IMG/VR virus record: IMGVR_UViG_3300028393_000019
Span: 186,001 to 250,000 of that record
Length of the DNA: 64,000 nt
Reading direction: 5' to 3' (one strand)
Shown here: positions 1 through 32,972 of the stretch, piece by piece
How the letters are laid out: every line of letters starts with the position of its first letter
Numbering within the stretch: the first letter of the stretch is position 1
Notes under the pieces: model-generated
The model's input: only the letters and a program-made list of their open reading frames with translations
What the model was told of the DNA's origin: nothing
The model's database searches: none
Made by a program: the position numbers and the translations under genes

Positions 1-743
1 TGAGCCATTAGATCCCATTCCCACCATAATTTTCTAGTGTTCCAATCTCCGGGATTAGCATGATGGTTATTGTGCCAACCGTCTCCCAGACTCACAAGAT
101 TAGCAATCCAGCTGTTAGTACTTCGATCCTTGGTTTCAAAGTTTCTATAACCATGCCCGTGCCCAAATACATTGACTACTCCGATAAGGTGCACAGTCAT
201 GCTGGCAGGTACGACGTAGACAAATAACCAAAGTATAGGATCGATCACCACCAGCACCAACGAAAATACAAAAATAATTTTAAAATAATTATTAAAGATA
301 AATTTGTGTACAGGTTTTTTCATTAGATCTTTAACATAGGCCACTGGGATATTAGGGATAGCCCAATCATAGCCCCACCACACTTTTAAAGCCTGTGTAA
401 TATCAAGTTTATCATTAATATATGGACTGTGCGGATCACCTTCCTTGTCTGATCTAGCATGATGCTGTCGATGCAATCCTACCCAACTTATAGTAGGGCC
501 TATTGTCGATATTACACTAATCAGACTTAGTGCATTTTCAAGCCATGGATGTGTAGTAAAACTCTTGTGTGTTAATAGTCTATGCAATGTTACTACACTA
601 CTGATAGGACCAATAATAAGCCATGATACAAATGCAATACCTAGGAGATAGTACTGTGCCGTCACTAATGCATACACTATTGCAGGGACAGCCGCTATAT
701 GATTAAACGCTTGTAGTAGTCTAATTTTTGTATTTAAATTCAT
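1..743 (-). CDS. Membrane fatty acid desaturase (delta-9/OLE1-like), runs off the window edge
   Basis: Not in ORF track; translated by hand from ATG at 743 (MNLNTKIRLLQAFNH...). Three His boxes HRLLTH, HRQHH and WHNNHH plus hydrophobic segments. Confidence 0.9.
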   Translation of the reverse strand, partial: MNLNTKIRLLQAFNHIAAVPAIVYALVTAQYYLLGIAFVSWLIIGPISSVVTLHRLLTHKSFTTHPWLENALSLISVISTIGPTISWVGLHRQHHARSDKEGDPHSPYINDKLDITQALKVWWGYDWAIPNIPVAYVKDLMKKPVHKFIFNNYFKIIFVFSLVLVVIDPILWLFVYVVPASMTVHLIGVVNVFGHGHGYRNFETKDRSTNSWIANLVSLGDGWHNNHHANPGDWNTRKLWWEWDLMA

Positions 744-1354
744 TTACCTTGTTCCAGTTGTTGCCACTCGTTGTCGTCGATAATTTTAGTATTCCAATTT
801 ACAAAAGCGCCGGGCGTTGTTTCATAGTATACAAAATTCTGCCAACATTTTTGTACAGGCCATGGGCATGTTTGTATATAACCGGCACCCAACGTCCATT
901 TATTATCGCTTGCAATGGCCATTTGATTGACCCAAGTATCCCACCAACGCTTTCCGCCTCGGTTGCGATTTTGCATAGTAATCAAATATAAATCGTAGTT
1001 GTTTACTTTTTCTAATGCATCGATTAACTTACAGGTTACTCTAAACCCATCAGTCATATCCGTAGGCTTCATGCGAAACTCAGGAAATGTATAAAGCCTG
1101 TTAATCATCTTTGCTACGTTTTTTGGGTAACGATCGTCTCTGAATACTCCGCCCATTACCATAGGTTTGCCTGTGCTGGTTTGATAGACTACCCCATACC
1201 CTGTGTGATGCTCTACCACTAAATTTTCCTCAGTATAGTTATGTCGTAACCAGTTGTCTTCCTTTAGGCAAAGCTGTCTAGCTTCTTCAAATTTTGGAAG
1301 AGACTTGTAGTATATAACTATGTGGGTATCTTGTACATCATATCTGTTTTGCAT
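740..1354 (-). CDS. Putative GNAT-fold acyltransferase
   Basis: RLYTFPEFR resembles GNAT motif A (RLYVxPExR); ATGA overlap with the desaturase gene. Confidence 0.4.
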   Translation of the reverse strand: MQNRYDVQDTHIVIYYKSLPKFEEARQLCLKEDNWLRHNYTEENLVVEHHTGYGVVYQTSTGKPMVMGGVFRDDRYPKNVAKMINRLYTFPEFRMKPTDMTDGFRVTCKLIDALEKVNNYDLYLITMQNRNRGGKRWWDTWVNQMAIASDNKWTLGAGYIQTCPWPVQKCWQNFVYYETTPGAFVNWNTKIIDDNEWQQLEQGK

Positions 1355-1360
1355 GAAGTA

Positions 1361-1376
1361 ATATTTACTTAAATAT
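1361..1376. promoter_or_regulatory. Back-to-back late-type promoter motifs (ATATTTA-CT-TAAATAT)
   Basis: TAAATA on both strands in the divergent gap between 1354 and 1394. Confidence 0.65.
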
Positions 1377-1393
1377 GCGTAGGTGGGAAAAAA

Positions 1394-2023
1394 ATGTTAG
1401 ATAACGCAGTAACCAAGTTAAACTTCACAATTAAATTAGATAGTTTAAGAGAATACTATCATATTCTAGCGGCTGAGTATGACCATTTAAAATGGAATTG
1501 GGAACGTCACGGTAATGATATAACTGAAGAATGGCGCAACCGTATGATGTCAGACAAGGGCACATTACTTCCGTATGGATGGGCTATACAGAGTAATTTA
1601 GTTGATATAACTATCCCATGTCCACCATATAACATTAGTACCCATGATCGATGCGACTATAGAAATACTGAATTAGCATTTGGACTTGTGACTAAACTAC
1701 AGGAACTAATGCCGTATACATACCGTTGGAGTTTAGTAGTACAGCCACCTGGCGGTAAGGTGACTAGGCATACTGATCAGGGTGATGAATACACTGCACA
1801 CATTCCAATATACGAGGCACCTGCCGCAGTTTTTAAATTTTGGGATACAGACGAATCTCAACGATTATTTAATATGGATGCCGACGGCACTGTTTATCTA
1901 GTAGATACTATTATTCCTCACGAAACAGAAAACTATGATACTACAGATAGAATAGGACTAGTGTTTAGATTTAAAAGAGATGACTTGCCCAAGTTACTAA
2001 ACATTACTGGCGAAATATCATGA
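1394..2023 (+). CDS. Asp/Asn beta-hydroxylase-like Fe(II)/2OG oxygenase
   Basis: HxD (RHTD) and distal His (PHETEN) followed by R-x-x-L-V strand of a cupin fold. Confidence 0.7.
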   Translation: MLDNAVTKLNFTIKLDSLREYYHILAAEYDHLKWNWERHGNDITEEWRNRMMSDKGTLLPYGWAIQSNLVDITIPCPPYNISTHDRCDYRNTELAFGLVTKLQELMPYTYRWSLVVQPPGGKVTRHTDQGDEYTAHIPIYEAPAAVFKFWDTDESQRLFNMDADGTVYLVDTIIPHETENYDTTDRIGLVFRFKRDDLPKLLNITGEIS

Positions 2024-2661
2024 CTGTAATATATACTCCTATAGATATAGAATTTGATGTACCTAATGAACAAGATGTAATTGACTGGTTTCATGCTAAT
2101 AAAATAACCGACAACGACTATTGGGAATATAAAGAAGGCCGACACGAATGGTGTTATGTAGCATTGCGCGAAGAACCCAAGGATTGGCGATCATATCGTG
2201 CATGGTTAGATTGGGCTGAAGAACGCAAGCCAATTGACAATCCTGGCATATTCTTTTATCCTGGATTTGAAGAAAAGTTTCCAGGGCTGGCAAAGTGCGT
2301 TCGAGAATTGCCGTTCGATCAAATAGGCACTAGCGGATTTATTATGCAAATAGGCACTATCCCTCCACACCAAGATGCTACCTATGATATGACCGAGCCT
2401 CGCCGCTATATTATCTATATAACTGATCCTGCATATAACACATTTCATCTTCTACACAAAGGTAAAAAGATTTGGCCGCAAATAGATCCTAAATATCGAT
2501 GCTTTGCGTTCAACAATACAGACGTTGAACATGCCGCAGACCCTACCAGTAGAACTAAAATATTGTTAAGTACTGTTGGTATAATGAATAAAGAAAAGCA
2601 CGAAGCTTTATTAAAACGCAGTATAGAAAAATTTAAAGACAAGGTGATATATGGAGTTTGA
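2020..2661 (+). CDS. Fe(II)/2OG-type cupin oxygenase
   Basis: IPPHQD ... EHAA motif pair. Confidence 0.65.
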   Translation: MTVIYTPIDIEFDVPNEQDVIDWFHANKITDNDYWEYKEGRHEWCYVALREEPKDWRSYRAWLDWAEERKPIDNPGIFFYPGFEEKFPGLAKCVRELPFDQIGTSGFIMQIGTIPPHQDATYDMTEPRRYIIYITDPAYNTFHLLHKGKKIWPQIDPKYRCFAFNNTDVEHAADPTSRTKILLSTVGIMNKEKHEALLKRSIEKFKDKVIYGV

Positions 2662-3340
2662 ATATTATTATAATCATGTACCCGGTGAAGAGCCTAGCAG
2701 GAATAATTTAATTTATACTAGTCTTATAGATAAAAAGAAAAAGGTGTTTGTACAATGGTACTATAATGATACGGATTATCATCAAGGACAAAATGAAGTT
2801 GTTGATCCTAAACTGATGGAAGAAAAGTTTCATAGAGAATTACATTTTTTGAGCAACATGGCTTGGCGCAATCCACATATGGTTCCAAAGATTATAGAAG
2901 TTAATGTTCCAGAGCGTAAAATATATTTGGCTATCAATGGCGAGGATTTTTGGAATCAAGCAAAATGTAGCGTTGAAAATTATGACAACGTATTGCCTGA
3001 CTGGCAAGAGCAAATGTTAGCAATACTTCAAGCACACAAAGACAGAGGTTGGTATAAATTTAGTTTACATCCTAGCAGTTACTTTATTGTAGACGGTAAA
3101 TTAAAAAGTATAAATTATTTTTTTACATACAGTAGCAATGAAGGCCCTATTAGCATCGCAGATCATGCAAGTCATATATACAGTGCAAGACAAGATATTA
3201 TGCGAAAACAAGTTGACGCGATGGGGTTAGACTGGGATGCTCCACAACCGCTAGATAAATTACAGCAGTTATGTTTTGAAAGTTTTAGAACAAATTATCC
3301 AGATGACTTTATAGCAAAGGCCAAAGCAATATATGATTAA
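2651..3340 (+). CDS. Protein-kinase-like fold protein with degenerate catalytic residues
   Basis: FHRELHFL (alphaC), VPKIIEV, and KFSLHPSSYFIVDGKLKSINYFF aligning with HxDLHPxN...LKxIDF. Confidence 0.5.
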   Translation: MEFEYYYNHVPGEEPSRNNLIYTSLIDKKKKVFVQWYYNDTDYHQGQNEVVDPKLMEEKFHRELHFLSNMAWRNPHMVPKIIEVNVPERKIYLAINGEDFWNQAKCSVENYDNVLPDWQEQMLAILQAHKDRGWYKFSLHPSSYFIVDGKLKSINYFFTYSSNEGPISIADHASHIYSARQDIMRKQVDAMGLDWDAPQPLDKLQQLCFESFRTNYPDDFIAKAKAIYD

Positions 3341-4127
3341 AGGAATTAATGGACAGCCGTATATAGACATGTCTCCATATATTGATATGTGTGCATTTGA
3401 TCGTTTGCAACCTGAAATACTAAGAGGCTTTGCAGATGCACGTGAATATGCTAAAGAAGGCACTTGGATGAAACCTGCTTTTAAAATAGAGGATATGAGT
3501 TACATTCCAAATTGGAAACCTATCTATAAAGCAATTGAAGAATTTTTGGCATTGCCGGATGACAATCCGATTAAACAAGGCGGCATTGACTTGTACAGAG
3601 ATTTCCAAGATTTTACAATACGCAATAGATTTACGCGATATATCAAGATGGCTATGGGCGCATACGATCCTTACATCTATTATTTCCTATGGGAACAAGG
3701 TAGTTGGGACGATCGTGACTCACCGCGCAAACTCACACCCGAAGCTGAATATTTTCCGGGAGTAGTCAAATGGATTGAGGATATGATCGAACATCGTATT
3801 TTTGAAAGCATTGGCAGAGTTATTTTCTTTCACTGCGAAGCCGGTGGTATTCCGTTTGAACATAGAGATCTAGATGGCGAAAAAGGATTACAACAAGGGT
3901 ATACCGATAATGTAAATGAATTCATACACATACGCCCTAACACAAAGAAACCTTTTTACCTGTGGGATCCCGAAACACGTAATCACACATATATTAATAG
4001 TCGTGCCGCATGGTGGAATGACCAAGACTGGCATGGTGGTAATCCTATTATGGAGCAAAGTTACGGTTTACGTATTGACGGAAAATTTACAGAAGAATTT
4101 AAATTAACGATAGCCAGTAAAGGTTAG
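3333..4127 (+). CDS. Fe(II)/2OG-type oxygenase
   Basis: PFEHRD ... DWHGG ... LRIDG. Confidence 0.65.
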   Translation: MIKGINGQPYIDMSPYIDMCAFDRLQPEILRGFADAREYAKEGTWMKPAFKIEDMSYIPNWKPIYKAIEEFLALPDDNPIKQGGIDLYRDFQDFTIRNRFTRYIKMAMGAYDPYIYYFLWEQGSWDDRDSPRKLTPEAEYFPGVVKWIEDMIEHRIFESIGRVIFFHCEAGGIPFEHRDLDGEKGLQQGYTDNVNEFIHIRPNTKKPFYLWDPETRNHTYINSRAAWWNDQDWHGGNPIMEQSYGLRIDGKFTEEFKLTIASKG

Positions 4128-4649
4128 CAAGTATTTGGGAACTAGTCCTATATTAGTTCCAGCATGCCAGCTGTGTATGTGGTTGTACTGATAGATGATT
4201 CCCTGCGGTTCATTATAATAAGCATCCTGTTCGGTAACGAATACATGTCCCGGCGCAGGTTTACTTAAGAAACAAAAAAATCTCACTAGTTCGCCTAACT
4301 GCTTGTGCTCTTCTTCCCATGGATTGATATCCCAATGCCATGGTGTACATTTACCAGGACGTAGCTCACTGACCCAACACATCAAAGGGTTGGCATTAAC
4401 AGACATACTGATGGCAAGTTCATAGTTTTTATGGAAATGCAAACCAGATTGGTAATGTCGATATTCCACTGTATGTTCATTATATCCTGCAGAGGTCAGT
4501 GCGGCGGTTTGACTAATATACTCATTGTAGTAAGGATTAGATTCTTCCAGTGTCATGTGACCGTGACTGGGTTCAACTTTGCGTGTTTTTATTTCAGCGA
4601 TTAGACTTTCACACAAAGCCCCAGTGAGCGTAGCTACATATTTTTTCAT
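4104..4649 (-). CDS. Fe(II)/2OG-type cupin oxygenase, paralog of the 17.2-20.9 kb array
   Basis: PWHWD, PGHVF, SWHAGTNIG shared with the array. Confidence 0.65.
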   Translation of the reverse strand: MKKYVATLTGALCESLIAEIKTRKVEPSHGHMTLEESNPYYNEYISQTAALTSAGYNEHTVEYRHYQSGLHFHKNYELAISMSVNANPLMCWVSELRPGKCTPWHWDINPWEEEHKQLGELVRFFCFLSKPAPGHVFVTEQDAYYNEPQGIIYQYNHIHSWHAGTNIGLVPKYLLTFTGYR

Positions 4650-5311
4650 ATTATTTTAAACTCATTAGGTAAGATGCATTTCAACGAATTTAACTTGTCT
4701 TTTTCTATATTAAAATTTATTGTCACATTGCCGTATGAAAATTTGTTTATAAATCCTAGTTTATTTGCTTTGTTAAGCCAGGTGCTTATAGTGTTATCAA
4801 AAATAAATCTAGCATCGTCGGCATTTGCCACAGTTGAAGCTAAAGCCACGCTGACTGGATCTGTCAATTTATTCCTTTTTAGTAACTGTCTAACTACCAA
4901 CTGTACTCTAGCACGACGACCAAAGTTAGTAGCAGTATGTAAAACTCCTGCATCCATGTCGTACCATATTCCGTCTTGTACTAATTTGTGTAGTTGTGGT
5001 GTCACTAGGTCGATCAAGTAACATTGCTCGCCCAATATATTAAGATGATATCTATCATCTATATCTGCATGTGTTTGATAGCATTGATTAGGATCCAAAA
5101 TAATAATCCTCGCTTCGCCCTTCGGTACTGGCAACGAGTCATACAAAGTTTGCCAAACTGTATCTTTGTACTCATCCTTTAATACCCACGAGTCGTAGAA
5201 GAAATCACCTGTTGACTGGTTAATCGTAGTTTTCATACCACCAGTGGGCAACGAACTACAAGCCTCTTGAAATAACTTTGAATCTACTGTATAATCTGTT
5301 TGAGTAAGCAT
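4646..5311 (-). CDS. Asp/Asn beta-hydroxylase-like oxygenase
   Basis: THADIDDRYHLNI ... LHTATNFG..R; start moved to ATG 5311 (MLTQTDY), 4 nt after TAAATA. Confidence 0.65.
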   Translation of the reverse strand: MLTQTDYTVDSKLFQEACSSLPTGGMKTTINQSTGDFFYDSWVLKDEYKDTVWQTLYDSLPVPKGEARIIILDPNQCYQTHADIDDRYHLNILGEQCYLIDLVTPQLHKLVQDGIWYDMDAGVLHTATNFGRRARVQLVVRQLLKRNKLTDPVSVALASTVANADDARFIFDNTISTWLNKANKLGFINKFSYGNVTINFNIEKDKLNSLKCILPNEFKII

Positions 5312-5349: not shown

Positions 5350-6207
5350 ATGGAACGTATACGCATCGCAGAATCCTATGACGAAAAATGGCTAGAGTCC
5401 GAGCGGCCACAGCCGTTGATAGATAATCATATCGAAGCATTAACTGCACAAGTTGTTAAGGGTGGAGTATTTAAGGATATTACAGATCAAGTATATATAG
5501 ATTATAAAAAGGAAATGACCAGGTGGTTATTACAGTCTAAAATTAATACAGTTACAGGATTAGATGATTTTAATCGTGTAGATATTATAAACGGTTGTAC
5601 ACAGTTTATAGACACAGCATATATGAACGGACCTGTACAAGTCTTAGCCGGTGACTATAGATATCATGCTAGACTAGGTAATTGTTATATACATCCTGGA
5701 TTCCTAAGTGAAGAAAAGCAATTAGTAATTGCTTGGCCATTTCCTAGTACAGGTGACACTCACCCAAAGATGAAGGAGATATTAGATGAAGCGCAAGACA
5801 AGGGAATTGGTGTACATGTGGACGGTGCTTGGCTTACTTGCTGCCGCGGAATTGACTTTGATTTATCACATCCATCTATTAAGTCAGTTGCTATAAGTTT
5901 GAGCAAAGGACTGGGACTGGGATGGAACAGAATTGGCTTACGTTGGACTAAGAGTAAGGATGCTGATGCTGTTACAATACAAAATGACTTCAATATGAAT
6001 CTTCGGGCTCCTGCTATGATCGGACTACATTTTTTACGGAATCTAGAACCGGATTACTTATGGAACACCCACAGCGATAGATACTATAAAATATGTCATG
6101 ACTTTGTACTCAAACCGACTAGAAGTATATACCTAGCACTACGCAACGGACAACCGGTTGGTGTTAGCCCATTGATAAGGTATTTAGAAAATGCAAACAT
6201 TTCATGA
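5350..6207 (+). CDS. PLP-dependent fold-type I enzyme (aminotransferase/aldolase-like)
   Basis: VHVDGAW (PLP Asp) and SLSKGLG (Schiff-base Lys). Confidence 0.75.
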   Translation: MERIRIAESYDEKWLESERPQPLIDNHIEALTAQVVKGGVFKDITDQVYIDYKKEMTRWLLQSKINTVTGLDDFNRVDIINGCTQFIDTAYMNGPVQVLAGDYRYHARLGNCYIHPGFLSEEKQLVIAWPFPSTGDTHPKMKEILDEAQDKGIGVHVDGAWLTCCRGIDFDLSHPSIKSVAISLSKGLGLGWNRIGLRWTKSKDADAVTIQNDFNMNLRAPAMIGLHFLRNLEPDYLWNTHSDRYYKICHDFVLKPTRSIYLALRNGQPVGVSPLIRYLENANIS

Positions 6208-18988: not shown

Positions 18989-18990
18989 AA

Positions 18991-22136: not shown

Positions 22137-22287
22137 TAGCACACTACAAACACAATAAAAAATACATAGAGCTTGTTACTAGCCTATATGTATTTTCTGA
22201 AGCACAATCTACAGGGTCACCTACCCATTACGATGCAACTACTTGGCAATGGGGTGACAAAACTATTTTAATTCAAGAAGTAGGAAT

Positions 22288-26868: not shown

Positions 26869-27976
26869 AATATTCTGTATCAGCAATCAAAGGCAGTACT
26901 AACATAAGGTTATCCTGCCCATTATTCCATACTCCTATATGCAAACCGTTGTCATAGAATGTTTGTTCAGGAGTTGACTTAATATCTATATCAAACATTA
27001 ATCCGTAGTTTCTAAAAGTTAACCCCATACTAGTAAAAAGTCTGGTCGCAGTATCGACAGTTGCAGTGTATTGATTTAATAAATCTTCTGTTTCTAATAT
27101 TTCTAAATATTTTAAAGTTGAATAAATTCCACTTAATGAAAATGTATAGGTGAACCCGTGTCCCAAAAACTCATGCTTTACTACTTCGTTAACACGATCG
27201 CTTACTAGCGTAGCACTTAAAGGAAAGTATCCCCCAGTCAATGCCTTGCCCATGGTAAAAATATCAGGATCCAACTCAGTATCGAATCCAACAAACTTAC
27301 CTGTCTTGCCACCACACATGGCAATATCATCTAAAATAAAAATCACATCGTGATCTCTGCATGTTTGTCTAAGTTCTCGCCAAAAATCTTTAGTATACTG
27401 TTTAAGACCCTTATTCCACGAGCATGTTTCCATAACTAGGCAACAGGCTGTTTTAGTTTTAACAGCGTCTATTAATTCTTCTTGATTCAAAGCAATACAA
27501 TTTTCAACAGGATGTTTGGTCATATACTCTAATTGGCCGATGCCGGATGTTAGGTAAGTACTTCCGTGGTAAGAATTTTTAACACCGAGTATAGTGTGCC
27601 TAGGGTTACCTTTAGCTTCGTGATATATTTTGGCTAATTTAATTGCACCCTCGACTGCGTCACTTCCACTTAGGGCAAATATACTTCTATAACCACCAGT
27701 GATATCATATAGTTTATTTGTTAGATCTATAACTGCCTGATTAGTGGTCATGTATTCGCCGCCAGCGAATGGATTGTCTAACATTTTATCAGCAACATAG
27801 TGTATAATGTCTTTACGATCAAATCCTAGTAAAAAACAGCCGCAGGATCCTAGACTTAAATCTATTAAATCTTTGCCGTTTTCTACAAATCCAAATCTTG
27901 TATAATTATCAATCTTTCTTGCGTTAGAATGATCGTAGTTGTAGTTAAAAGGGAACAAGAGCTTTAAATTTTTCAT
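26822..27976 (-). CDS. Class III PLP aminotransferase (BioA-like)
   Basis: SGSDAVEGA, SYHGST, DDIAMCGGKTG, MGKALTGGYFPLSA. Confidence 0.9.
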   Translation of the reverse strand: MKNLKLLFPFNYNYDHSNARKIDNYTRFGFVENGKDLIDLSLGSCGCFLLGFDRKDIIHYVADKMLDNPFAGGEYMTTNQAVIDLTNKLYDITGGYRSIFALSGSDAVEGAIKLAKIYHEAKGNPRHTILGVKNSYHGSTYLTSGIGQLEYMTKHPVENCIALNQEELIDAVKTKTACCLVMETCSWNKGLKQYTKDFWRELRQTCRDHDVIFILDDIAMCGGKTGKFVGFDTELDPDIFTMGKALTGGYFPLSATLVSDRVNEVVKHEFLGHGFTYTFSLSGIYSTLKYLEILETEDLLNQYTATVDTATRLFTSMGLTFRNYGLMFDIDIKSTPEQTFYDNGLHIGVWNNGQDNLMLVLPLIADTEYFTKLQERLAASLHVD

Positions 27977-28005: not shown

Positions 28006-29922
28006 ATGAAAAATGTCTATCTTATACAAACTGAAATTACTTCCGGACCCTCTAATGAGCACTACCTACCATTCAGTGTAGGATGTATTTGGGCCTATGC
28101 AAACCAATTTGATTATGTGAAAAATAACTATAAATTGCAAGATGTTATTTGGCGGAGAGATAGACAAAAAAATGTAATTGAAAAGATCATCGACCCTAGT
28201 ATCATTGGATTTAGTTGCTACGTATGGAATCATAAATGGAATCTAACCTTAGCTAAGAAATTAAAAGAACGTTTTCCAAACTGTCTAATAGTGTTTGGTG
28301 GTCCTAGTGTTAATGAAGAATGGCTCAAATACGATTTTATCGATGTTGCAATGTTTGGCGAGGGAGAAGTTGCATGGGCTAATCTTTTAAAGATGAATCT
28401 TAATAACGAGACTATTCCGAGATATTGGAATAACCCGAGACAAACAGATATTGAAAATTATCCTAGCCCTTACACTACAGGGTTCTTTGATAAAATTATT
28501 GCAGACAATCCAGATATTAGTTGGTTTATGATGCTAGAAACTAACAGAGGATGTCCTTATCACTGTACGTTTTGCGGCTGGGGAGCCGACTATCTTAACA
28601 AACTAAAAAACTTTAACCTACATAGGGTTGAGGAAGAAATCAAATGGGCTATAACACATAACATACATTGGATGTTTGTGATCGATGCTAACTCAGGTAT
28701 AATGAAAGAACGTGATGTCGAAGTAGCGTGGATGATCCGCAGAGCTATAGAAGCACCCAACAGCAAAATTAGACGTGTAACCTTTAACCATGCTAAAAAT
28801 TTAAATGAGCATTGTTTTGAAATGGAAAAGATTATTCAAGCATGGACTTACGGTTTAGAAATGGCTATACAAAGCATGCACCAGCCCACACTAGATGCTG
28901 TGAAAAGAATTAACATGGGTATGAACAATTTAGAACGTGCTTATGCCTTATGCCGTAAACACGGTATTAGATACTACACAGAGATGGTTTTAGGTTTACC
29001 TTTAGAAACCAAGGACACTTATATTAATGGCCTAATGAGATTAATGGAATTAGGACAACACGACAGCGTTAAAACTTATCCTGCTACTGTTATTCCTAAT
29101 AGTGAAATGGACAGTGAAGAGTATAGAAACAAATACGGAATTAAGTTGATATATCCTAAAGATATGTATCGTAGTCCCGAAGAACGCATATGGGACGACG
29201 AAGATAGTAGTCATGAAAATATTGCCATGGTGTCGAGCACAAATACTGCTACCAGCCAAGATATTGCAGATTCATTAGCGTACAGTTGGATGATGAGTCA
29301 ATTTCATTATTTAGGAATAACACAACTTACTTCACGGTACTTGTATGAAATGCATAATGTTCCATACCGTCAATATTATGATGCATTATACAACGCAATT
29401 AAGAACGACATTATAGGCGGTCCTATACTAAATGATGTAGAAGAAATATTTGTAAATTATTTCACTTACGGTGAAATGCCTGTAGGTGAAAAATGGAAGA
29501 ACGTAGTTGCATTGACTATGCCCGAAAGTTACGGTATGGACGATATATTTGAAAACAAGAATCATTTTATAGACCTCGGAGTTACCGTTGGAAACTTATT
29601 TCATACTATAGATCCAAGTGTCATAGAATTACAGTATGCTTTTATGTTGGATGAAAGCAAATCATATCCATTCATTCTAGAATCAGATATAGATATTGAT
29701 AGATGGGAACGTTTATCATGCTCATATTCGGTTAATAGGCGTTACATGGTTAGTCACATGCATGACCAAATGTATCAAAAATATTTGCTTAAAACTGATA
29801 TTGCAAATATTAATAATCCTTATGTTGAAACCGACATAGAAGATTCATATAAAGGCAATAAGATCTCAGTCATTCCTATTTTACCTATACCTACAACTAC
29901 CGCTAGTGGGAGAGTTATGTAA
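28006..29922 (+). CDS. Cobalamin-binding (class B) radical SAM protein
   Basis: N-terminal B12 domain (IGFSCYVWN, VFGGP, GEGE) and ETNRGCPYHCTFCGW. Confidence 0.9.
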   Translation: MKNVYLIQTEITSGPSNEHYLPFSVGCIWAYANQFDYVKNNYKLQDVIWRRDRQKNVIEKIIDPSIIGFSCYVWNHKWNLTLAKKLKERFPNCLIVFGGPSVNEEWLKYDFIDVAMFGEGEVAWANLLKMNLNNETIPRYWNNPRQTDIENYPSPYTTGFFDKIIADNPDISWFMMLETNRGCPYHCTFCGWGADYLNKLKNFNLHRVEEEIKWAITHNIHWMFVIDANSGIMKERDVEVAWMIRRAIEAPNSKIRRVTFNHAKNLNEHCFEMEKIIQAWTYGLEMAIQSMHQPTLDAVKRINMGMNNLERAYALCRKHGIRYYTEMVLGLPLETKDTYINGLMRLMELGQHDSVKTYPATVIPNSEMDSEEYRNKYGIKLIYPKDMYRSPEERIWDDEDSSHENIAMVSSTNTATSQDIADSLAYSWMMSQFHYLGITQLTSRYLYEMHNVPYRQYYDALYNAIKNDIIGGPILNDVEEIFVNYFTYGEMPVGEKWKNVVALTMPESYGMDDIFENKNHFIDLGVTVGNLFHTIDPSVIELQYAFMLDESKSYPFILESDIDIDRWERLSCSYSVNRRYMVSHMHDQMYQKYLLKTDIANINNPYVETDIEDSYKGNKISVIPILPIPTTTASGRVM

Positions 29923-31082
29923 TGTTAATGGGCTTTAATCAAACTAACATAGACCGATTACTAGCAAGTATAAATGGTACAGTTTTAGATCCAACAGTAA
30001 GCCTATGCCATCATTGCCATAGACATATACCAGCATGGCGCTACCATAAAGATAATCAGGTGTTTATAGCCAAGTCATGTCCCATACATGGTATTAGCCA
30101 TCATATGATCGAATCTGACTATGAGTTTTATGCTAATCTATATTACACCCAGGATAATCCAGATTTTAATTTTAATGGCGGAGTACTTATCGAAGGTAGT
30201 GACCGCTGTAATTTAGAATGCCCACATTGTTACCATTTACCAGAAAACGATGCCCGCGACCCTTCTATAGAAGAATTGCTCGATCAAATACGAGATATGC
30301 CGGTAGGCGAGGATGGAGTACATAGAATCATCCTCGCCGGTGCTGAAAGTACCTTACGCAAAGACTTTCCAGAATTGATAACAGCTATCCGTGAGTTAGA
30401 TCCCGAAATGGATGTTAGTGTAATGACTAATGGCATACGTTTCAATGACAGCGATTTTATTCATAAATGTGTTGAAGCTGGACTTGCAGGTGTTAACATT
30501 GGGCTTAATCATCCAAGTTACATCGATCACGAAACTGTAAGACGTAAACAAGTTAGTGCTATTGAAAACATGCACCGTGAAGATATCAAGATAGGTTACA
30601 TTAGTTATACTATGGTAGACTTCAGTGAGCTTGATTACATACTAACTGAGATTACTAGTAATCCTTGGACTCCTAAAAATTTCCGCATACGTAATGGTGC
30701 AGAAATAGGACGTAATGCCAGCACCGAACAACCGTTTGTTAGCAACTTATACAAACGTGCGGAGCAATGGTGCAAGGATCATAGTAAACAGTTTGAACGA
30801 ATCATAGAAGCAGACAATAATATCTATCATGTTATGGTTAAGATTGAAGATAAAATTGTGCGATTAATCAGCTGGTGCGATGAAACCAATATTGATATGG
30901 AAGAATTGCGTAGCGGACCTTGGTGTAACTTTGTACCCGACGGTATTACAAACTTCTTACATCAGATTATACGCAGAGATGTGTTTAAAAATAAAGGACT
31001 AGCCTTACCGGATAGCCCTCCTAGTCGATATAAATTTAATCGCACACCCGATAAGTCAAAACTTAATTTGCTAAATCTATAA
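29922..31082 (+). CDS. Radical SAM protein with Tes/MJ0619 (COG1964)-like N-terminal metal site
   Basis: SLCHHCHRHIPA...KSCPIHG, CNLECPHC, TNGIRF, C-terminal PDG. Confidence 0.8.
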   Translation: MLMGFNQTNIDRLLASINGTVLDPTVSLCHHCHRHIPAWRYHKDNQVFIAKSCPIHGISHHMIESDYEFYANLYYTQDNPDFNFNGGVLIEGSDRCNLECPHCYHLPENDARDPSIEELLDQIRDMPVGEDGVHRIILAGAESTLRKDFPELITAIRELDPEMDVSVMTNGIRFNDSDFIHKCVEAGLAGVNIGLNHPSYIDHETVRRKQVSAIENMHREDIKIGYISYTMVDFSELDYILTEITSNPWTPKNFRIRNGAEIGRNASTEQPFVSNLYKRAEQWCKDHSKQFERIIEADNNIYHVMVKIEDKIVRLISWCDETNIDMEELRSGPWCNFVPDGITNFLHQIIRRDVFKNKGLALPDSPPSRYKFNRTPDKSKLNLLNL

Positions 31083-31419
31083 AGCCATTTGACCTATCAA
31101 GGAATTTAGTTTTAATATTTAAAATATTAAACTTATTCAAAACTTTAACAACATCTGGTACATTAAATTTTTTACAACTATAAACATCTAGTTGTATTAG
31201 ACCAGTATCCCAAGTGTGCATGACAATATGACTAGTAGTTATAGCCATGAGTGCTGTGTATCCTTCGTTATCTAAAACTTCTGATCTATAGACATATGGC
31301 CCTCCTAGTATTTCCATGTCAATAGTTGATACAATATCTAGTAGAATGTTTTTAACATCTAATTCAGACAATTGTGTTTCAGCAGTACCTTGTATTAATA
31401 GGTGCAAATGATCTAACAC
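31063..31419 (-). CDS. speD: S-adenosylmethionine decarboxylase proenzyme (pyruvoyl-dependent)
   Basis: GYTALMAITTSHIVMHTW and DVYSC; GTG start. Confidence 0.8.
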   Translation of the reverse strand: MLDHLHLLIQGTAETQLSELDVKNILLDIVSTIDMEILGGPYVYRSEVLDNEGYTALMAITTSHIVMHTWDTGLIQLDVYSCKKFNVPDVVKVLNKFNILNIKTKFLDRSNGFIDLAN

Positions 31420-32013
31420 TTAAGGCTTCCTTCCTATGATCATGTAACGTGTGTACAGGGGTAATTTCATTTCGCCGCCCCAAAGAAAATGTAATCCACA
31501 AGTTTCCTTAAATTCATCAAATGATTTATGCCACCGCACATGCTCGGGGATATTATAATCATTACTTTGGATAATAATCAAACTACCGTTAGGCATTCTA
31601 TCCAACCATTTATCGTATTGTGCTTGTGTTAAGTGTTCACAGCTAGTATTAATAATAATATCTGCAACAGAAATTACATCGCACATATCTGCCGTATACG
31701 CTTTGAACCGACCTTCAATTTCTTCACCCTTGTTCATTAGCGTAGCAATAGGTTCGCAGGTTGGATCAATGTCAATACTGCGAATAGTAGTAATGGGAAT
31801 GTTGCTCTGAAATAACATGCTGGCAAGTGTACCAACCCAGCCGCCGAAGATGTCTATGCTAGATGCAAAATGCACATGCTCATCTAGACAATCAATCAAC
31901 CATTCTTTGCTTTTTAATTGCCCCGACCAAAAGGCATCCATAGTACGCATAGGGTCCGGGCTTTGACGGATGGCCTGCATCCAATGGTGTAAATGGTTTG
32001 TATCTATCTGCAT
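31420..32013 (-). CDS. Class I SAM-dependent methyltransferase-like protein
   Basis: IDIFGGWVG glycine motif, IRSIDID, TADM, IINTSCEH. Confidence 0.65.
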   Translation of the reverse strand: MQIDTNHLHHWMQAIRQSPDPMRTMDAFWSGQLKSKEWLIDCLDEHVHFASSIDIFGGWVGTLASMLFQSNIPITTIRSIDIDPTCEPIATLMNKGEEIEGRFKAYTADMCDVISVADIIINTSCEHLTQAQYDKWLDRMPNGSLIIIQSNDYNIPEHVRWHKSFDEFKETCGLHFLWGGEMKLPLYTRYMIIGRKP

Positions 32014-32960
32014 TTTGGTATCTTGCTGTCCGCACTACTAACACATCTAGTAGTCACGCATTTTTGTGGCACAGAAAACAAAGTAAATTTTTCTATCGTG
32101 CCCAGTGCGGCTTCGTGGCAACTGTAAGCACGTTTGACTTCCGTACCTTTTATTATAACACTCTGATAACCTGCATTACAAGTCCAATTGGCAAATTGAT
32201 TAAACCCCAGTGCATTAAACCGTTCTGCTTGATCTATAAAATAATTTTTATCACCATCCATTAAACGGATTTGATAACCTTCCTGCTGTTCAAAATCGTT
32301 TTGCATTATATCAACCATCTCAGCTGTGTAGCCTTCCACTATGGCGGTGGCACTGTCATTGCTTTGTGGTTTAAGTGTTACATTAATTCCACGAGCTCGA
32401 AATCGTTCACAGCGTTCTAGTGTTTCAAAGAACAGTTCTGGCACCATAACTTGATTAACAGTTACATGAACCCGCTCGTTCATTAACTGTAAACACTTGT
32501 CACCGAACTCGTGCTCCTTGGCGAACTCTGCATGAAAGCTGGCTGTAATACTGCGGCGCTGTAGACAATCAGTGATGCTACACCAGTTTTTCCACCAGCT
32601 GGGTCCCGGACTCAAATTGGTAGTCATATGTATACTTTGGTAGGGACTTTCTAATTCATCTATATGTTTGATCAATTCGGGCAACTGTTTGTACGCAGTA
32701 GGTTCACCTCCTGAGAAGCTCCAGTGAAATTGGGTGAATCCGTTCAAACGAGCTTGACGTTTTATCTCGTCGACTGTAGTCTTATAGACTTCTAAACTTT
32801 GGTAATCCAAATTGTCGCTTCGGGCATAGGGCCAACAATAGCTACATTTGTAATTACAAAATCTACCTAGGATCCAACTTATGTTAAATAATGGGCGATC
32901 CAACATTGTTTGTTGCCCAAAATGCGTTATGTCTTTGAAAGGAATGATTGCGAAGTTCAT
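32004..32960 (-). CDS. Radical SAM protein with C-terminal twitch-like domain
   Basis: CNYKCSYC, FSGGEP, WTCNAGYQS...C...CVTTRC. Confidence 0.9.
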   Translation of the reverse strand: MNFAIIPFKDITHFGQQTMLDRPLFNISWILGRFCNYKCSYCWPYARSDNLDYQSLEVYKTTVDEIKRQARLNGFTQFHWSFSGGEPTAYKQLPELIKHIDELESPYQSIHMTTNLSPGPSWWKNWCSITDCLQRRSITASFHAEFAKEHEFGDKCLQLMNERVHVTVNQVMVPELFFETLERCERFRARGINVTLKPQSNDSATAIVEGYTAEMVDIMQNDFEQQEGYQIRLMDGDKNYFIDQAERFNALGFNQFANWTCNAGYQSVIIKGTEVKRAYSCHEAALGTIEKFTLFSVPQKCVTTRCVSSADSKIPKCR

Positions 32961-32966
32961 TGACAG

Positions 32967-32972
32967 TATTTA
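32967..32972 (-). promoter_or_regulatory. Late-type promoter motif TAAATA
   Basis: 6 nt before ATG 32960. Confidence 0.55.

What the first reader, a model, noticed from the sequence alone, without database searches (positions are those of the whole stretch)
1..32972. 33-kb phage tailoring-enzyme island with no visible scaffold gene
Seen: about 40 consecutive genes, most of them modifying enzymes: 8 radical SAM, about 13 Fe/2OG cupins, a halogenase-like flavoprotein, an amidinotransferase, 2 PLP enzymes, a QueC-like ATPase, AdoMetDC, a methyltransferase, a nitroreductase, an SDR, a desaturase and 3 SGNH proteins. There is no NRPS/PKS, no obvious RiPP precursor and no transporter. Known: this palette resembles natural-product clusters and phage base-hypermodification pathways. 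Inference: the substrate is a macromolecule or host pool (virion proteins, DNA bases, envelope lipids), and late-type promoters point to decoration during assembly.
Basis: partly seen in the sequence, partly recalled or inferred. Interest (0 to 1): 0.8.

Follow-up and report, generated by a model that had tools for sequence, protein, structure and literature searches.

The report
Scaffold-free enzyme island in jumbo phage
A freshwater jumbo phage carries a 33-kb block of 41 back-to-back genes, nearly all soluble modifying enzymes; related uncultured phages keep the same block, and it probably builds an unknown nitrogen-rich compound from host metabolites, though nothing here shows the product or target.

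Summary
Window 1-32960 is 99.5% coding. It has 41 ORFs on a 265,680-bp viral contig and lower G+C (about 37%) than its right flank (about 42%).

Confirmed:
- 8 radical SAM enzymes
- a PrnA/RebH-type halogenase
- an AGAT/StrB1/HsvA-type amidinotransferase
- an omega-transaminase
- an AdoMetDC homologue, a nitroreductase, a short Rossmann protein and a desaturase

Of 13 proposed cupins, 9 are well supported, 3 moderately and 1 by motif only. The second PLP enzyme, the PP-loop "QueC-like" protein and the methyltransferase fold have moderate support. The three SGNH calls are weak.

There is no NRPS/PKS, transporter or conserved precursor peptide. The flanks are phage genes.

New findings: the block is a conserved viral module. 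In 75 non-identical IMG/VR loci the amidinotransferase travels with a 138-aa Cys protein, the transaminase, a B12 radical SAM and a Zn-ribbon radical SAM. Smaller relatives occur in Campylobacter phage CP220 and T4-like cyanophages.

Best reading (0.4): a scaffold-free small-molecule pathway in which a carbonyl becomes an amine and then a guanidine, followed by radical, hydroxylating and halogenating tailoring. Rivals are virion-protein decoration, GTP-derived base modification and an unrelated gene grab-bag. The product is unknown.

The parts
1..743 (-). Membrane fatty-acid desaturase; its 3' end runs off the window start
   Evidence: His boxes in the translation. Pfam FA_desaturase on the full 255-aa gene.
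740..1354 (-). 204-aa protein, unknown
   Evidence: No Pfam or PHROG hit.
1394..2023 (+). Cupin, Asp/Asn beta-hydroxylase family
   Evidence: Pfam Asp_Arg_Hydrox 1.7e-4. hhalign to 14476 at 93%. Invariant H126xD...H176.
2020..2661 (+). Probable cupin
   Evidence: Invariant HQD...H. hhalign 77% to the 18464 family.
2651..3340 (+). Protein-kinase-like fold protein
   Evidence: Profile A6 against PDB TTK kinase domain, 5e-5. 57-64% identical in relatives.
3333..4127 (+). Cupin / 2OG-oxygenase fold, virus-specific family
   Evidence: AF2 pLDDT 64; Foldseek proline hydroxylase and PHD2, 6e-5. Invariant H177xD179...H234. Nearly absent from cellular genomes.
4104..4649 (-). Cupin, paralogue of the tandem family
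   Evidence: blastp and hhalign 100% to 17237-20855.
4646..5311 (-). Cupin, Asp/Asn beta-hydroxylase-like
   Evidence: hhalign 89% to 1394. Pfam E 0.13. Invariant HAD...H.
5350..6207 (+). Probable PLP fold-type-I enzyme
   Evidence: Atlas score 0.99 to viral Aminotran_1_2 / class V clusters. SLSK stretch noted by eye in the translation. No Pfam or PDB hit.
6191..6919 (+). PP-loop ATPase, QueC-like
   Evidence: Invariant SGGADS and C-terminal CGECFWC. Pfam QueC 0.03. No significant PDB or NCBIfam match.
6903..8168 (+). N-terminal-twitch radical SAM
   Evidence: NCBIfam N_Twi_rSAM 1.8e-99, above cutoff. Pfam Radical_SAM + SPASM.
8161..9057 (+). Radical SAM, one of three paralogues
   Evidence: Pfam 1.7e-14. 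hhalign 100% to 9834 and 32004.
9038..9847 (+). Possible SGNH-like protein (weak)
   Evidence: FGCSFT block noted by eye in the translation. N-terminal similarity to 19532 only.
9834..10820 (-). Radical SAM, paralogue of 8161
   Evidence: Pfam 1.5e-12.
10817..12229 (-). N-terminal-twitch radical SAM
   Evidence: NCBIfam N_Twi_rSAM 5e-113.
12222..13313 (-). Radical SAM, related to CP220 gp080/083/084
   Evidence: Pfam 3.2e-7. tblastn to the CP220 array, 4e-17.
13338..14483 (+). 381-aa virus-only family; methyltransferase-like lead
   Evidence: Atlas: viral clusters only, one of them fused to Asp_Arg_Hydrox.
14476..15216 (+). Cupin, Asp/Asn beta-hydroxylase family
   Evidence: Pfam 1.1e-9.
15219..15911 (+). 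Nitroreductase-family flavoprotein; a possible flavin reductase for the halogenase (inference)
   Evidence: Pfam 2.3e-7.
15898..16479 (+). Possible cupin (motif only)
   Evidence: HxD/E...H pattern only; no homologues in fetched loci.
16476..17240 (+). Possible SGNH-like protein (weak)
   Evidence: N-terminal FGDSFS block noted by eye; no profile support.
17237..17944 (+). Cupin, tandem paralogue 1
   Evidence: blastp and hhalign. Pfam Asp_Arg_Hydrox 0.008.
17928..18467 (+). Cupin, tandem paralogue 2
18464..18988 (+). Cupin, tandem paralogue 3; the most conserved one, 61% identical in relatives
   Evidence: Family profile against PDB 7v4f beta-hydroxylase, 0.02.
18991..19545 (+). Cupin, tandem paralogue 4
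19532..20323 (+). Possible SGNH/GDSL hydrolase (weak)
   Evidence: Pfam Lipase_GDSL 0.022.
20301..20855 (+). Cupin, tandem paralogue 5
20845..21354 (+). Short Rossmann / SDR-like protein (169 aa)
   Evidence: Pfam Epimerase 4e-6, N-terminal part only. Neighbour of the amidinotransferase in 21-25 of 75 loci.
21351..22136 (+). 261-aa protein, unknown
   Evidence: No hits.
22106..22306 (+). 66-aa ORF, found only in this strain
22288..23259 (-). 323-aa protein, unknown
   Evidence: Only sub-threshold Pfam hits. No PHROG hit.
23300..24868 (+). Flavin-dependent halogenase, tryptophan-halogenase type
   Evidence: Pfam 3e-93. PrnA/RebH 2e-56 and viral VirX1 9e-53; Lys and Glu equivalents kept; WxWxIP degenerate.
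24853..25461 (+). Probable cupin
   Evidence: HID...H conserved. hhalign 45%.
25451..25867 (+). 138-aa protein with invariant Cys22 (CPxAK); the closest-lying partner of the amidinotransferase
   Evidence: Adjacent to it in 37-41 of 75 loci. phrog_10325. Homologues in T4-like cyanophages. AF2 pLDDT 81 with no PDB fold match.
25864..26868 (+). Arginine-dependent amidinotransferase (AGAT/StrB1/HsvA superfamily)
   Evidence: Profile against PDB, 1e-37 to 3e-26. 176 viral relatives.
26822..27976 (-). Class III (omega) aminotransferase
   Evidence: Pfam 2e-44. PDB omega-, putrescine-, polyamine- and BioA-type transaminases. Neighbour in 44 of 75 loci.
28006..29922 (+). B12-binding radical SAM (class B, methylase-like)
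   Evidence: Pfam B12-binding + Radical_SAM. Nearest NCBIfam family is KedN5, below cutoff. Neighbour in 32-41 of 75 loci, in both context types.
29922..31082 (+). Zn-ribbon radical SAM (HMPTM/Tes/TrsS-like)
   Evidence: Pfam Zn_ribbon_HMPTM 5e-13 + Radical_SAM 9e-18. NCBIfam scores below cutoffs.
31063..31419 (-). Pyruvoyl decarboxylase of the AdoMetDC/SpeD family; substrate untested
   Evidence: Pfam 2e-12. NCBIfam 34.8 bits, below the 75.65 cutoff.
31420..32013 (-). Class I SAM-dependent transferase fold protein
   Evidence: GGWxG...DxDP pattern. Atlas: viral methyltransferase-fold clusters. No Pfam or PDB hit.
32004..32960 (-). Radical SAM, paralogue of 8161
   Evidence: Pfam 1.6e-12. hhalign 100%.

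Best explanation
The island is one conserved, virus-specific, cytoplasmic pathway. It makes or remodels a nitrogen-rich small molecule from host primary metabolites. That is why it needs no NRPS, PKS or precursor-peptide gene.

SHOWN. The enzyme families, their intact catalytic motifs, and their co-inheritance across divergent phages.

INFERRED, step by step.
1. The omega-transaminase converts a carbonyl on the substrate into a primary amine.
2. The AGAT-type amidinotransferase, always next to a 138-aa Cys protein, uses arginine to turn that amine into a guanidine.
3. The B12 radical SAM and the Zn-ribbon radical SAM methylate or rearrange unactivated carbons.
4. The twitch-type and the three paralogous radical SAMs do further radical chemistry.
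5. The roughly 13 Asp/Asn-hydroxylase-type cupins hydroxylate different positions or different congeners.
6. The PrnA-type halogenase halogenates an indole-like or other electron-rich moiety. The nitroreductase-family flavoprotein may be its flavin reductase.
7. The SpeD homologue supplies decarboxylated SAM, or a decarboxylated arginine or ornithine. The adjacent SAM-transferase-fold protein would use it.

The acceptor scaffold is unknown. It could be a polyamine or amino acid, a sugar or cyclitol, or a GTP-derived heterocycle. The biological role is also unknown. Candidates are a DNA counter-ion, an inhibitor of the host or of competitors, or a precursor later attached to a macromolecule.
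For: CO-INHERITANCE.
- Relatives whose halogenase is only 39-65% identical keep the same gene set, with partly shuffled order.
- A compact version of about 21 kb has the same families between a desaturase and the radical SAM genes. Another version is flanked by an Mtd_N gene.
- In 75 non-identical IMG/VR loci, the amidinotransferase's commonest neighbours are the Cys protein (41, median 0.7 kb away), the omega-transaminase (44, 1.1 kb), the B12 rSAM (32-41) and the Zn-ribbon rSAM (31). Cupins, SDR, SpeD and the halogenase follow.

SMALL-MOLECULE CHARACTER OF THE CORE.
- Amidinotransferase hits are HsvA, StrB1, AGAT and SxtG.
- Transaminase hits are amine:pyruvate, putrescine, polyamine, BioA and GABA transaminases.
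- The halogenase is nearest to free-tryptophan halogenases and to viral VirX1.

ENZYMES LOOK ACTIVE. CxxxCxxC and HxD...H are conserved in essentially all homologues. The halogenase Lys and Glu are kept.

LOCATION AND ORIGIN.
- All island proteins except the desaturase lack transmembrane segments.
- The 3333 family is essentially virus-only. Atlas look-alikes are more than 90% viral.

SUPPORT GENES. Fe-S, redox and SOD genes lie nearby in the genome.

RNA. Fragments of the genes occur in two lake metatranscriptomes.

PRECEDENT. Iyer et al. 2010 (PMC2938197) proposed amino-acid-derived metabolites for cyanophage dioxygenase/halogenase arrays.
Against: - No product, substrate or phenotype is known.
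- There is no exporter, resistance gene or regulator.
- Twitch/SPASM radical SAMs and Asp/Asn beta-hydroxylases are classic peptide and protein modifiers.
- The island and its relatives sit beside tail-fibre or baseplate genes.
- In cyanophage S-SCSM2R, an amidinotransferase and a prolyl hydroxylase were found in the virion proteome.
- In about 17 loci the same amidinotransferase family sits between FolE and PTPS, which points to nucleobase or pterin chemistry.
- All enzymes except the N-twitch rSAMs score far below NCBIfam equivalog cutoffs, so reaction types are extrapolated.
- Co-inheritance within one phage clade could partly reflect plain vertical descent.
Confidence: 0.4

Rival explanations
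1. The enzymes post-translationally decorate phage structural proteins, such as tail fibres or receptor-binding proteins. The modifications would be hydroxylation, halogenation, radical cross-links or methylations, and possibly guanidinylation of lysines. They would occur late in infection and would alter adsorption or resistance to host proteases and defences.
For: - An Mtd_N-type tail-fibre gene flanks the island in the window's genome and in a 51%-identity relative.
- The CP220 homologous array lies between baseplate and tail-fibre genes.
- The cyanophage homologue of the Cys protein lies next to baseplate wedge genes.
- In S-SCSM2R, an amidinotransferase and a prolyl hydroxylase were detected in purified virions.
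- The Asp_Arg_Hydrox and twitch/SPASM families often act on peptides.
- The TAAATAT start motif is shared with the tail-fibre-like gene 57180-59423.
Against: - AGAT-type amidinotransferases, omega-transaminases and SpeD-type decarboxylases are not known to act on proteins (established enzymology).
- No conserved small precursor exists.
- No candidate substrate protein has been shown to co-vary with the island.
Confidence: 0.2
2. The island hypermodifies a nucleobase or nucleotide. This could be in phage DNA or in tRNA, or it could yield a free nucleoside analogue. The starting point would be a GTP-derived 7-deazaguanine or pterin intermediate. For example, an aminomethyl or aldehyde side chain could be aminated and then guanidinylated, then methylated and hydroxylated.
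For: - In about 17 of 75 loci the same amidinotransferase family and B12 rSAM sit with GTP cyclohydrolase I, PTPS, a HIT protein, a cytidylyltransferase and NDP-sugar enzymes.
- The window has a PTPS/QueD-family gene at 61048-61533, a PP-loop QueC-like protein and an rSAM with the pterin-methylase-type Zn ribbon.
- CP220 DNA is fully 7-amido-7-deazaguanine-modified (PMC10516641). CP220 carries a homologous amidinotransferase/rSAM array near a QueD gene.
- An odd tRNA-like gene abuts the island.
Against: - The window has no FolE, no QueE equivalog and no DpdA/TGT hit.
- The QueD and QueC-like scores are far below family cutoffs.
- The FolE/PTPS context and the big-island context do not overlap in any of the 75 loci.
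- The rest of the 265-kb contig was not examined.
Confidence: 0.2
3. The region is a hyperplastic dumping ground of unrelated auxiliary metabolic genes. It would contain several small independent functions, with tandem duplications, and no single pathway.
For: - G+C is lower than in the flank.
- The middle part, 13.3-23.3 kb, is a lineage-specific expansion that compact relatives lack.
- Gene order is shuffled between relatives.
- The halogenase accompanies the amidinotransferase in only 18 of 75 loci.
- Cyanophages carry scattered members of the same families.
Against: - The same 20 or so families stay together at 40-65% identity in many samples.
- Adjacency within the core is tight.
- Genes overlap and the block is 99.5% coding, which is operon-like packing.
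Confidence: 0.13
4. The island remodels host envelope lipids or lipopolysaccharide. This would follow the logic of LpxO/OlsC-type acyl hydroxylation plus desaturation and acyl hydrolysis.
For: - A desaturase sits at the island edge in three lineages.
- Asp_Arg_Hydrox is also the LpxO/OlsC family (established knowledge).
- There are possible SGNH proteins.
- The Zn-ribbon rSAM and the B12 rSAM show weak similarity to Tes and to a lipid biosynthesis (ladderane-type) B12 rSAM model.
Against: - Every protein except the desaturase lacks transmembrane segments.
- The SGNH evidence is weak.
- The conserved core is amine and guanidine chemistry.
Confidence: 0.05

Closest known systems
Cyanophage Syn9-type tandem dioxygenase / tryptophan-halogenase arrays (Iyer, Abhiman, de Souza & Aravind 2010, PMC2938197)
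   Same: - Phage-encoded run of many distinct Fe/2OG-type dioxygenases with flavin halogenases and a small conserved-Cys protein.
- No synthetase.
- Function still unknown.
- The 138-aa Cys protein and the halogenase have 37-40% and 29-34% identical homologues in T4-like cyanophages.
   Different: - The island here adds 8 radical SAMs, an amidinotransferase, an omega-transaminase, a SpeD homologue, a PP-loop protein and a kinase-like protein.
- Its cupins are of the Asp/Asn-hydroxylase type. No JmjC/MINA member was seen.
- The host is probably not a cyanobacterium.
- The Cys protein was not compared directly with the Syn9 protein. Its model has no dUTPase-like match.
Campylobacter phage CP220 (Firehammervirus) radical SAM array with amidinotransferase (Timms et al. 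2010, PMC2853527)
   Same: - Homologous amidinotransferase (25% identity, 4e-20) inside a run of 5-6 radical SAM genes.
- Three of those rSAMs match 12222-13313 (4e-17).
- NDP-sugar transferases, QueD and a ThDP protein are nearby.
- The array lies next to tail genes.
   Different: - CP220 has no cupin array, no halogenase, no transaminase and no Cys protein.
- It is much smaller.
- CP220 is a T4-like phage of a pathogen-associated host with dADG DNA.
Guanidino-aminocyclitol logic of streptomycin biosynthesis (StsC, StsE, StrB1)
   Same: - The chemical order is carbonyl to amine (aminotransferase), then phosphorylation (kinase-fold enzyme), then amidino transfer from arginine (StrB1 is the second-best PDB hit, 3e-31).
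- Twitch and B12 radical SAMs and dTDP-sugar enzymes also occur in aminoglycoside clusters.
- A dTDP-sugar-like cluster lies 14 kb to the right.
   Different: - No inositol-phosphate or deoxy-scyllo-inosose synthase.
- No glycosyltransferase in the island.
- The transaminase is class III, not DegT/StsC type.
- This is an analogy of logic only, drawn from established knowledge.
Phage polyamine modules (SpeD/SpeE and neofunctionalised SpeD decarboxylases; PMC9992855, PMC10407285)
   Same: - A small pyruvoyl AdoMetDC-family gene in a phage, next to a SAM-transferase-fold gene.
- HsvA, the best PDB match of the amidinotransferase, is described as a polyamine amidinotransferase (own knowledge).
   Different: - No recognisable spermidine synthase.
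- The SpeD homologue scores below the equivalog cutoff.
- Polyamine synthesis would not explain about 35 further enzymes.

Membership tests
Canonical natural-product gene cluster (NRPS/PKS/RiPP) | Scaffold synthase, or a precursor-peptide gene | tested here: not met
   No NRPS/PKS domain in Pfam scans of all 41 ORFs or of the flanks. The only small ORFs (66 aa here, 45 aa in one subclade) are not conserved across relatives.
Canonical natural-product gene cluster (NRPS/PKS/RiPP) | Co-clustered tailoring enzymes | tested here: met
   8 rSAM, about 13 cupins, a halogenase, transferases and PLP enzymes.
Canonical natural-product gene cluster (NRPS/PKS/RiPP) | Exporter or self-resistance gene | tested here: not met
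   No transmembrane segments outside the desaturase. No transporter Pfam hit.
Syn9-type cyanophage dioxygenase/halogenase array | Tandem array of several non-identical Fe/2OG dioxygenases | tested here: met
   Five tandem paralogues plus eight further HxD...H proteins from at least three groups.
Syn9-type cyanophage dioxygenase/halogenase array | Tryptophan-halogenase-type flavoprotein in the array | tested here: met
   Cyanophage homologues at 29-34% identity.
Syn9-type cyanophage dioxygenase/halogenase array | JmjC/MINA-clade dioxygenase, and a conserved-Cys protein with a dUTPase-like fold | tested here: inconclusive
   No JmjC/Cupin_8 Pfam hit. The conserved-Cys protein is present and shared with cyanophages, but its model matches no PDB fold. 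The Syn9 proteins themselves were not compared.
Phage 7-deazaguanine DNA modification (FolE-QueD-QueE-QueC-DpdA) | GTP cyclohydrolase I and a QueE radical SAM | tested here: not met
   No GTP_cyclohydroI in the window. rSAM hits to QueE models score 23-42 bits against cutoffs of 206-260.
Phage 7-deazaguanine DNA modification (FolE-QueD-QueE-QueC-DpdA) | QueD and QueC | tested here: inconclusive
   PTPS-family gene 61048-61533 scores 35 bits against the QueD cutoff of 89. The PP-loop protein shows QueC-like motifs only.
Phage 7-deazaguanine DNA modification (FolE-QueD-QueE-QueC-DpdA) | DpdA transglycosylase | not testable with these tools
   None was seen in the 64-kb window plus about 12 kb of flanks. 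The other roughly 190 kb of the contig was not read.
Thymidine hypermodification pathway (5-hmdU kinase, aGPT-Pplase) | dNMP hydroxymethylase, 5-HMUDK and amino-acid:DNA transferase genes | tested here: not met
   No such Pfam or PHROG hits in the window. Divergent members could have been missed.
Polyamine biosynthesis module (SpeD + aminopropyltransferase) | AdoMetDC with the processing serine, plus a spermidine-synthase-family enzyme | tested here: inconclusive
   AdoMet_dc Pfam domain present, with a TSH site where ESH is usual. It scores below the equivalog cutoff. The adjacent 31420 has a class I SAM-transferase fold but no Spermine_synth hit.
CP220-type phage rSAM/amidinotransferase array | Homologous amidinotransferase embedded among homologous radical SAM genes in a phage | tested here: met
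   tblastn gives 4e-20 for the amidinotransferase and 4e-17 for the rSAM; the genes are adjacent in CP220.

The most novel reading that the evidence does not exclude
A widespread clade of uncultured freshwater jumbo phages encodes the largest dedicated biosynthetic pathway yet seen in a bacteriophage. It has about 25 conserved core enzymes, expanded to 41 genes here, and needs no scaffold synthase. The pathway would make a new class of compound. One option is a guanidinylated, C-methylated, polyhydroxylated and possibly halogenated metabolite. The other is a new hypermodified GTP-derived base. The previously undescribed unit of Cys protein, amidinotransferase, omega-transaminase and B12 rSAM would be its heart.
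Probability: 0.35. Interest if true: 0.85.

Novelty: new variant of a known kind. Interest (0 to 1): 0.62.

Why it matters
Phage auxiliary genes are usually single steps that boost host pathways. A conserved block of 25 to 41 enzymes would mean that viruses run long, self-contained chemistry of their own.

Finding the product would do three things:
- It would explain dioxygenase/halogenase and radical SAM arrays that have been known since 2010 in cyanophages and Campylobacter phages and remain unexplained.
- It could reveal a new metabolite class or a new DNA or protein modification.
- It would supply many divergent radical SAM, cupin and halogenase enzymes that have no close cellular counterparts.

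The conserved five-gene core gives a small, testable entry point.

Tried and rejected
SIMILARITY SEARCHES THAT FOUND LITTLE.
- Megablast of 50 kb of the window against GenBank phages: no match.
- Rfam at gathering thresholds: nothing.
- PDB profile searches for 31420, 25451, 3333 and 6191, and phmmer for 5350: no significant hit.
- Foldseek of the 138-aa Cys protein model: no match with E below 0.28.
- PHROGs for nine unknown proteins: only phrog_10325, for the Cys protein.
- Scan of 185,579 species genomes with the 3333 profile: one 4.5-kb MAG contig and one weak hit, so no cellular homologous cluster to borrow a function from.

IDEAS TESTED AND DROPPED.
- RiPP precursor. The 66-aa ORF is strain-specific. 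The 45-aa ORF of relatives is confined to one subclade.
- Sigma70 promoter or terminator enrichment. Counts are within the shuffle range.
- T4-late TATAAATA. Three sites in 64 kb.
- TAAATAT overall count. Not enriched (28 found, 25 expected). Only its position at gene starts stands out.
- Equivalog assignment for QueD, QueC, QueE, SpeD, KedN5, Tes or viperin. All scores are far below cutoffs.
- Cellular origin of the contig. Rejected.

LIMITED RESULT. Laid metatranscriptome contigs show only that the genes are present in RNA libraries. They give no strand or timing.

Full report
WHAT IS THERE

The window is part of a 265,680-bp viral contig (IMG/VR UViG_3300028393_000019, JGI Ga0304728_1000002). 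Window position 1 corresponds to about contig position 186,001. Near-identical copies occur in several freshwater lake metagenomes. GenBank phages hold no nucleotide-level relative.

Positions 1-32960 contain 41 ORFs with overlapping or abutting ends and are 99.5% coding. G+C is 0.34-0.395 over the island. It steps up to 0.40-0.44 from about 32 kb, apart from a dip at 48-52 kb.

To the left, just outside the window, lie a 199-aa gene and a 690-aa Mtd_N-type tail-fibre-like protein. To the right come:
- a perfect sigma70-consensus promoter at 32960-32988;
- a 96-nt tRNA-like gene;
- a run of small genes;
- a metallophosphatase, a MazG-like protein, a redoxin, ClpP and an ATP-dependent DNA ligase.

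So the contig is viral, and no scaffold synthase hides just outside the island.

CHECKING THE INVENTORY

Radical SAM. All eight proteins are confirmed by Pfam. CxxxCxxC is conserved in essentially all aligned homologues. Genes 6903-8168 and 10817-12229 are N-terminal-twitch rSAMs that pass the NCBIfam cutoff. A third paralogue, 46760-48121, lies outside the island in a sugar cluster. Genes 8161, 9834 and 32004 form a second paralogous trio. Gene 28006 is a B12-binding class B enzyme. Gene 29922 carries the HMPTM-type zinc ribbon.

Cupins. Thirteen proteins carry an HxD...H triad that is invariant in their homologues.
- Six of them are clear paralogues, five of them in tandem at 17.2-20.9 kb.
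- Three more hit Asp_Arg_Hydrox directly or through profiles.
- Gene 3333 is supported by a modest AF2 model that matches proline and prolyl hydroxylases.
- Genes 2020 and 24853 have weaker profile links.
- Gene 15898 rests on the motif alone.

Other enzymes.
- The halogenase is solid: Pfam 3e-93, PrnA/RebH 2e-56 and the cyanophage enzyme VirX1 9e-53. The catalytic Lys and Glu equivalents are kept, but the WxWxIP motif is degenerate.
- The amidinotransferase is solid against HsvA, StrB1, AGAT and SxtG.
- The class III transaminase is solid and of the omega-amine type.
- Also confirmed are the AdoMet_dc homologue, the nitroreductase-family protein, a short Rossmann protein and the desaturase.
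- The second PLP enzyme (5350), the PP-loop 'QueC-like' protein (6191; invariant SGGADS and CGECFWC) and the SAM-transferase fold of 31420 have moderate support.
- The three SGNH calls are weak.

- A protein-kinase-like protein, 2651.
- A 138-aa protein with an invariant cysteine, 25451.
- A virus-only 381-aa family, 13338, which other viruses carry fused to an Asp/Asn hydroxylase domain.

Nothing in the island has a transmembrane segment except the desaturase.

A CONSERVED VIRAL MODULE

IMG/VR contigs whose halogenase is only 39-65% identical share most island families.

One relative (JGI 3300022841) has a compact version of about 21 kb. It runs: desaturase, cupins, kinase-like protein, Zn-ribbon rSAM, cupins, twitch rSAM, rSAM, a homologue of 9038-9847, twitch rSAM, halogenase, Cys protein, transaminase, amidinotransferase, SpeD, SAM-transferase fold, rSAMs. 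Another relative is flanked by an Mtd_N gene. The window's 13.3-23.3 kb segment is therefore a lineage-specific expansion.

A profile scan with the amidinotransferase found 176 viral relatives. In 75 non-identical loci, most of them cut off by contig ends, its neighbours were:

| Neighbour | Loci of 75 | Note |
|---|---|---|
| omega-transaminase | 44 | median 1.1 kb away |
| Cys protein | 41 | median 0.7 kb away |
| B12 rSAM | 32-41 | |
| Zn-ribbon rSAM | 31 | |
| cupins | 23-30 | |
| 8161-type rSAMs | 25 | |
| SDR-like protein | 21-25 | |
| SpeD homologue | 18-21 | |
| halogenase | 18 | |

Two contexts separate cleanly.
- Type A, about 45 loci, is the big island seen here.
- Type B, about 17 loci, places the amidinotransferase and a B12 rSAM among GTP cyclohydrolase I, PTPS, a HIT protein, a cytidylyltransferase, an NDP-sugar dehydratase and a protein that by eye looks like a GT2-type glycosyltransferase (no Pfam hit).

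The 3333 family is practically absent from 185,579 species genomes. Atlas look-alikes of three island proteins are more than 90% viral.

RELATIVES IN CULTURED PHAGES

- Campylobacter phage CP220 has a homologous amidinotransferase inside an array of radical SAM genes. Three of those are homologous to 12222-13313. QueD, a ThDP protein and two NDP-sugar transferases are nearby, and the array lies between baseplate and tail-fibre genes.
- T4-like cyanophages carry the Cys protein (37-40% identity) and distant halogenases.
- Iyer et al. 2010 described the Syn9 array of ten dioxygenases, two halogenases and a small Cys protein. They proposed amino-acid-derived metabolites.
- A 2025 description of cyanophage S-SCSM2R lists amidinotransferases, a PLP enzyme, an rSAM, SpeD and PrnA as unexplained 'antibiotic synthesis genes'. 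It found an amidinotransferase and a prolyl hydroxylase in the virion proteome.
- My searches of the held library found no functional characterisation of any of these arrays.

HOW IT MOST LIKELY WORKS

What is shown: the enzyme families, their intact active-site motifs, their tight packing and their co-inheritance.

What is inferred: the conserved core reads as small-molecule amine chemistry. An omega-transaminase would make a primary amine from a carbonyl. An arginine-dependent amidinotransferase would convert it to a guanidine. A B12 rSAM and a Zn-ribbon rSAM would act on unactivated carbons. Accessory layers would add:
- hydroxylation, by many paralogous cupins;
- halogenation, with a possible flavin reductase in the nitroreductase-family protein;
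- SAM- or arginine-derived amine supply, through the SpeD homologue next to a SAM-transferase fold (phage SpeD homologues can be AdoMet, arginine or ornithine decarboxylases);
- ATP-dependent activation, by the PP-loop and kinase-like proteins.

Because the building blocks would be host metabolites (arginine, SAM, 2-oxoglutarate and an unknown acceptor), no scaffold synthase is needed. I give this reading 0.4.

The genome also carries redoxin, Fe-SOD and an IscA-like Fe-S gene. These fit a heavy Fe-S enzyme load.

RIVALS

- Virion-protein decoration (0.2). It is favoured by the repeated adjacency to tail-fibre and baseplate genes, by the virion-proteome report and by the peptide-modifier reputation of the twitch/SPASM and AspH families. 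It is disfavoured by the small-molecule nature of the core and by the lack of a conserved substrate gene.
- GTP-derived base or pterin modification (0.2). It is favoured by the type B contexts, the window's PTPS gene, the PP-loop protein, the pterin-methylase-type zinc ribbon and the CP220 parallel (CP220 DNA is fully dADG). It is disfavoured by the absence of FolE, QueE and DpdA in what I could read, and by the non-overlap of type A and type B contexts.
- Unrelated-gene grab-bag (0.13). It fits the low G+C, the lineage-specific middle segment and the facultative halogenase. It does not fit the persistence of about 20 families together.
- Lipid remodelling (0.05). It has little beyond the desaturase.

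REGULATION AND EXPRESSION

Sigma70-like sites and terminators are not above chance. The T4 late box is essentially absent.

Every intergenic gap in the island carries TAAATAT 3-19 nt upstream of the first gene and in the matching orientation. The gaps have these motif positions: 1361/1370, 5315, 13328, 23278 and 27993. The motif also precedes the tail-fibre-like gene 57180-59423 and the RmlC-like gene. Ten of 28 occurrences fall in the 1.8% of sequence that is intergenic. It may be a phage promoter or a translation-start element. Calling it late-type is unproven.

Two lake metatranscriptomes contain 100%-identical fragments spread over 26.9-32.9 kb at low depth. This is compatible with transcription, but DNA carry-over is not excluded.

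VERDICT

The island is a large, conserved and so far uncharacterised variant of phage enzyme arrays that have been noticed before but never explained. The new element is the recognition of a widespread viral core (Cys protein, amidinotransferase, omega-transaminase, B12 rSAM, Zn-ribbon rSAM) and of its two genomic contexts.

The product and its target remain unknown.

Noticed in passing
window 32960-33090: A perfect sigma70 consensus (TTGACA-17-TATAAT) at 32960-32988 is followed at once by a 96-nt tRNA-like gene with an encoded CCA end, clean acceptor and T arms, and a long variable region. ARAGORN calls it tRNA-Pro(GGG) with the anticodon at an odd position. The Rfam tRNA score is 28.4 bits, just under the 29-bit gathering score.
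   Followed up: partly
window 35050-35078 and 39703-39731: Two further near-perfect or perfect sigma70 consensus promoters (11/12 and 12/12) lie on the + strand, in the stretch of small genes right of the island. This looks like an early-gene region, in contrast to the island.
   Followed up: no
window 46760-55926: A second enzyme cluster for nucleotide-sugar chemistry. It holds a third N-twitch radical SAM, two unknown proteins of about 460 aa, an RmlC-like epimerase, three SDR epimerase/dehydratases, and a ThDP-dependent E1-like enzyme split into alpha (50078-50707) and beta (55387-55926) parts. This suggests a branched or two-carbon-extended sugar. G+C dips to 0.375 at 48-52 kb.
   Followed up: partly
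window 42411-43531, 61048-61533, 63015-63575 and just beyond the right end: Redoxin/AhpC, ClpP, a PTPS/QueD-family gene, UvdE and Fe-SOD lie in the window. Beyond it come an IscA/HesB-type Fe-S assembly gene and a 4416-aa ORF. These could be redox and Fe-S support for the many Fe-S and Fe(II) enzymes.
   Followed up: no
window 34159-34410 and 40604-41302: An IF1/eIF-1a-fold protein and a Bax1-I (BI-1/YccA-like) membrane protein are encoded by the phage.
   Followed up: no
window intergenic gaps (1361, 1370, 5315, 13328, 23278, 27993, 34408, 49525, 59443): TAAATAT lies 3-19 nt upstream of start codons and is oriented with the gene. Ten of 28 hits fall in the 1.8% of sequence that is intergenic, although the overall count is not enriched.
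   Followed up: partly
left of window (L108 1-1220) and L113 18588-20213: An Mtd_N-domain protein flanks the island in two divergent lineages. This is the major tropism determinant type that is the variable target of diversity-generating retroelements in Bordetella phage. No reverse transcriptase or template repeat was looked for.
   Followed up: no
L117 (JBDNIA010000100.1, 4.5 kb): The only close cellular-genome hit of the 3333 family (67% identity) is a short contig binned into a Crocinitomicaceae (Bacteroidota) MAG. It is probably a mis-binned phage fragment, but it may hint at the host.
   Followed up: no
window 13338-15216: The 381-aa unknown protein and the following Asp/Asn hydroxylase overlap by 8 nt. 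An atlas cluster of 688-aa viral proteins, 97% of whose members carry Asp_Arg_Hydrox, is a feature look-alike (score 0.81) of the 381-aa protein. This suggests the two are fused in other viruses.
   Followed up: no
L175 and 16 similar loci (type B context): In another viral lineage the same amidinotransferase family lies between GTP cyclohydrolase I and PTPS. A HIT protein, a B12 rSAM, a cytidylyltransferase, a possible GT2-type glycosyltransferase (judged by eye, no Pfam hit) and an NDP-sugar dehydratase are alongside. This is a compact, separate candidate pathway worth its own study.
   Followed up: partly
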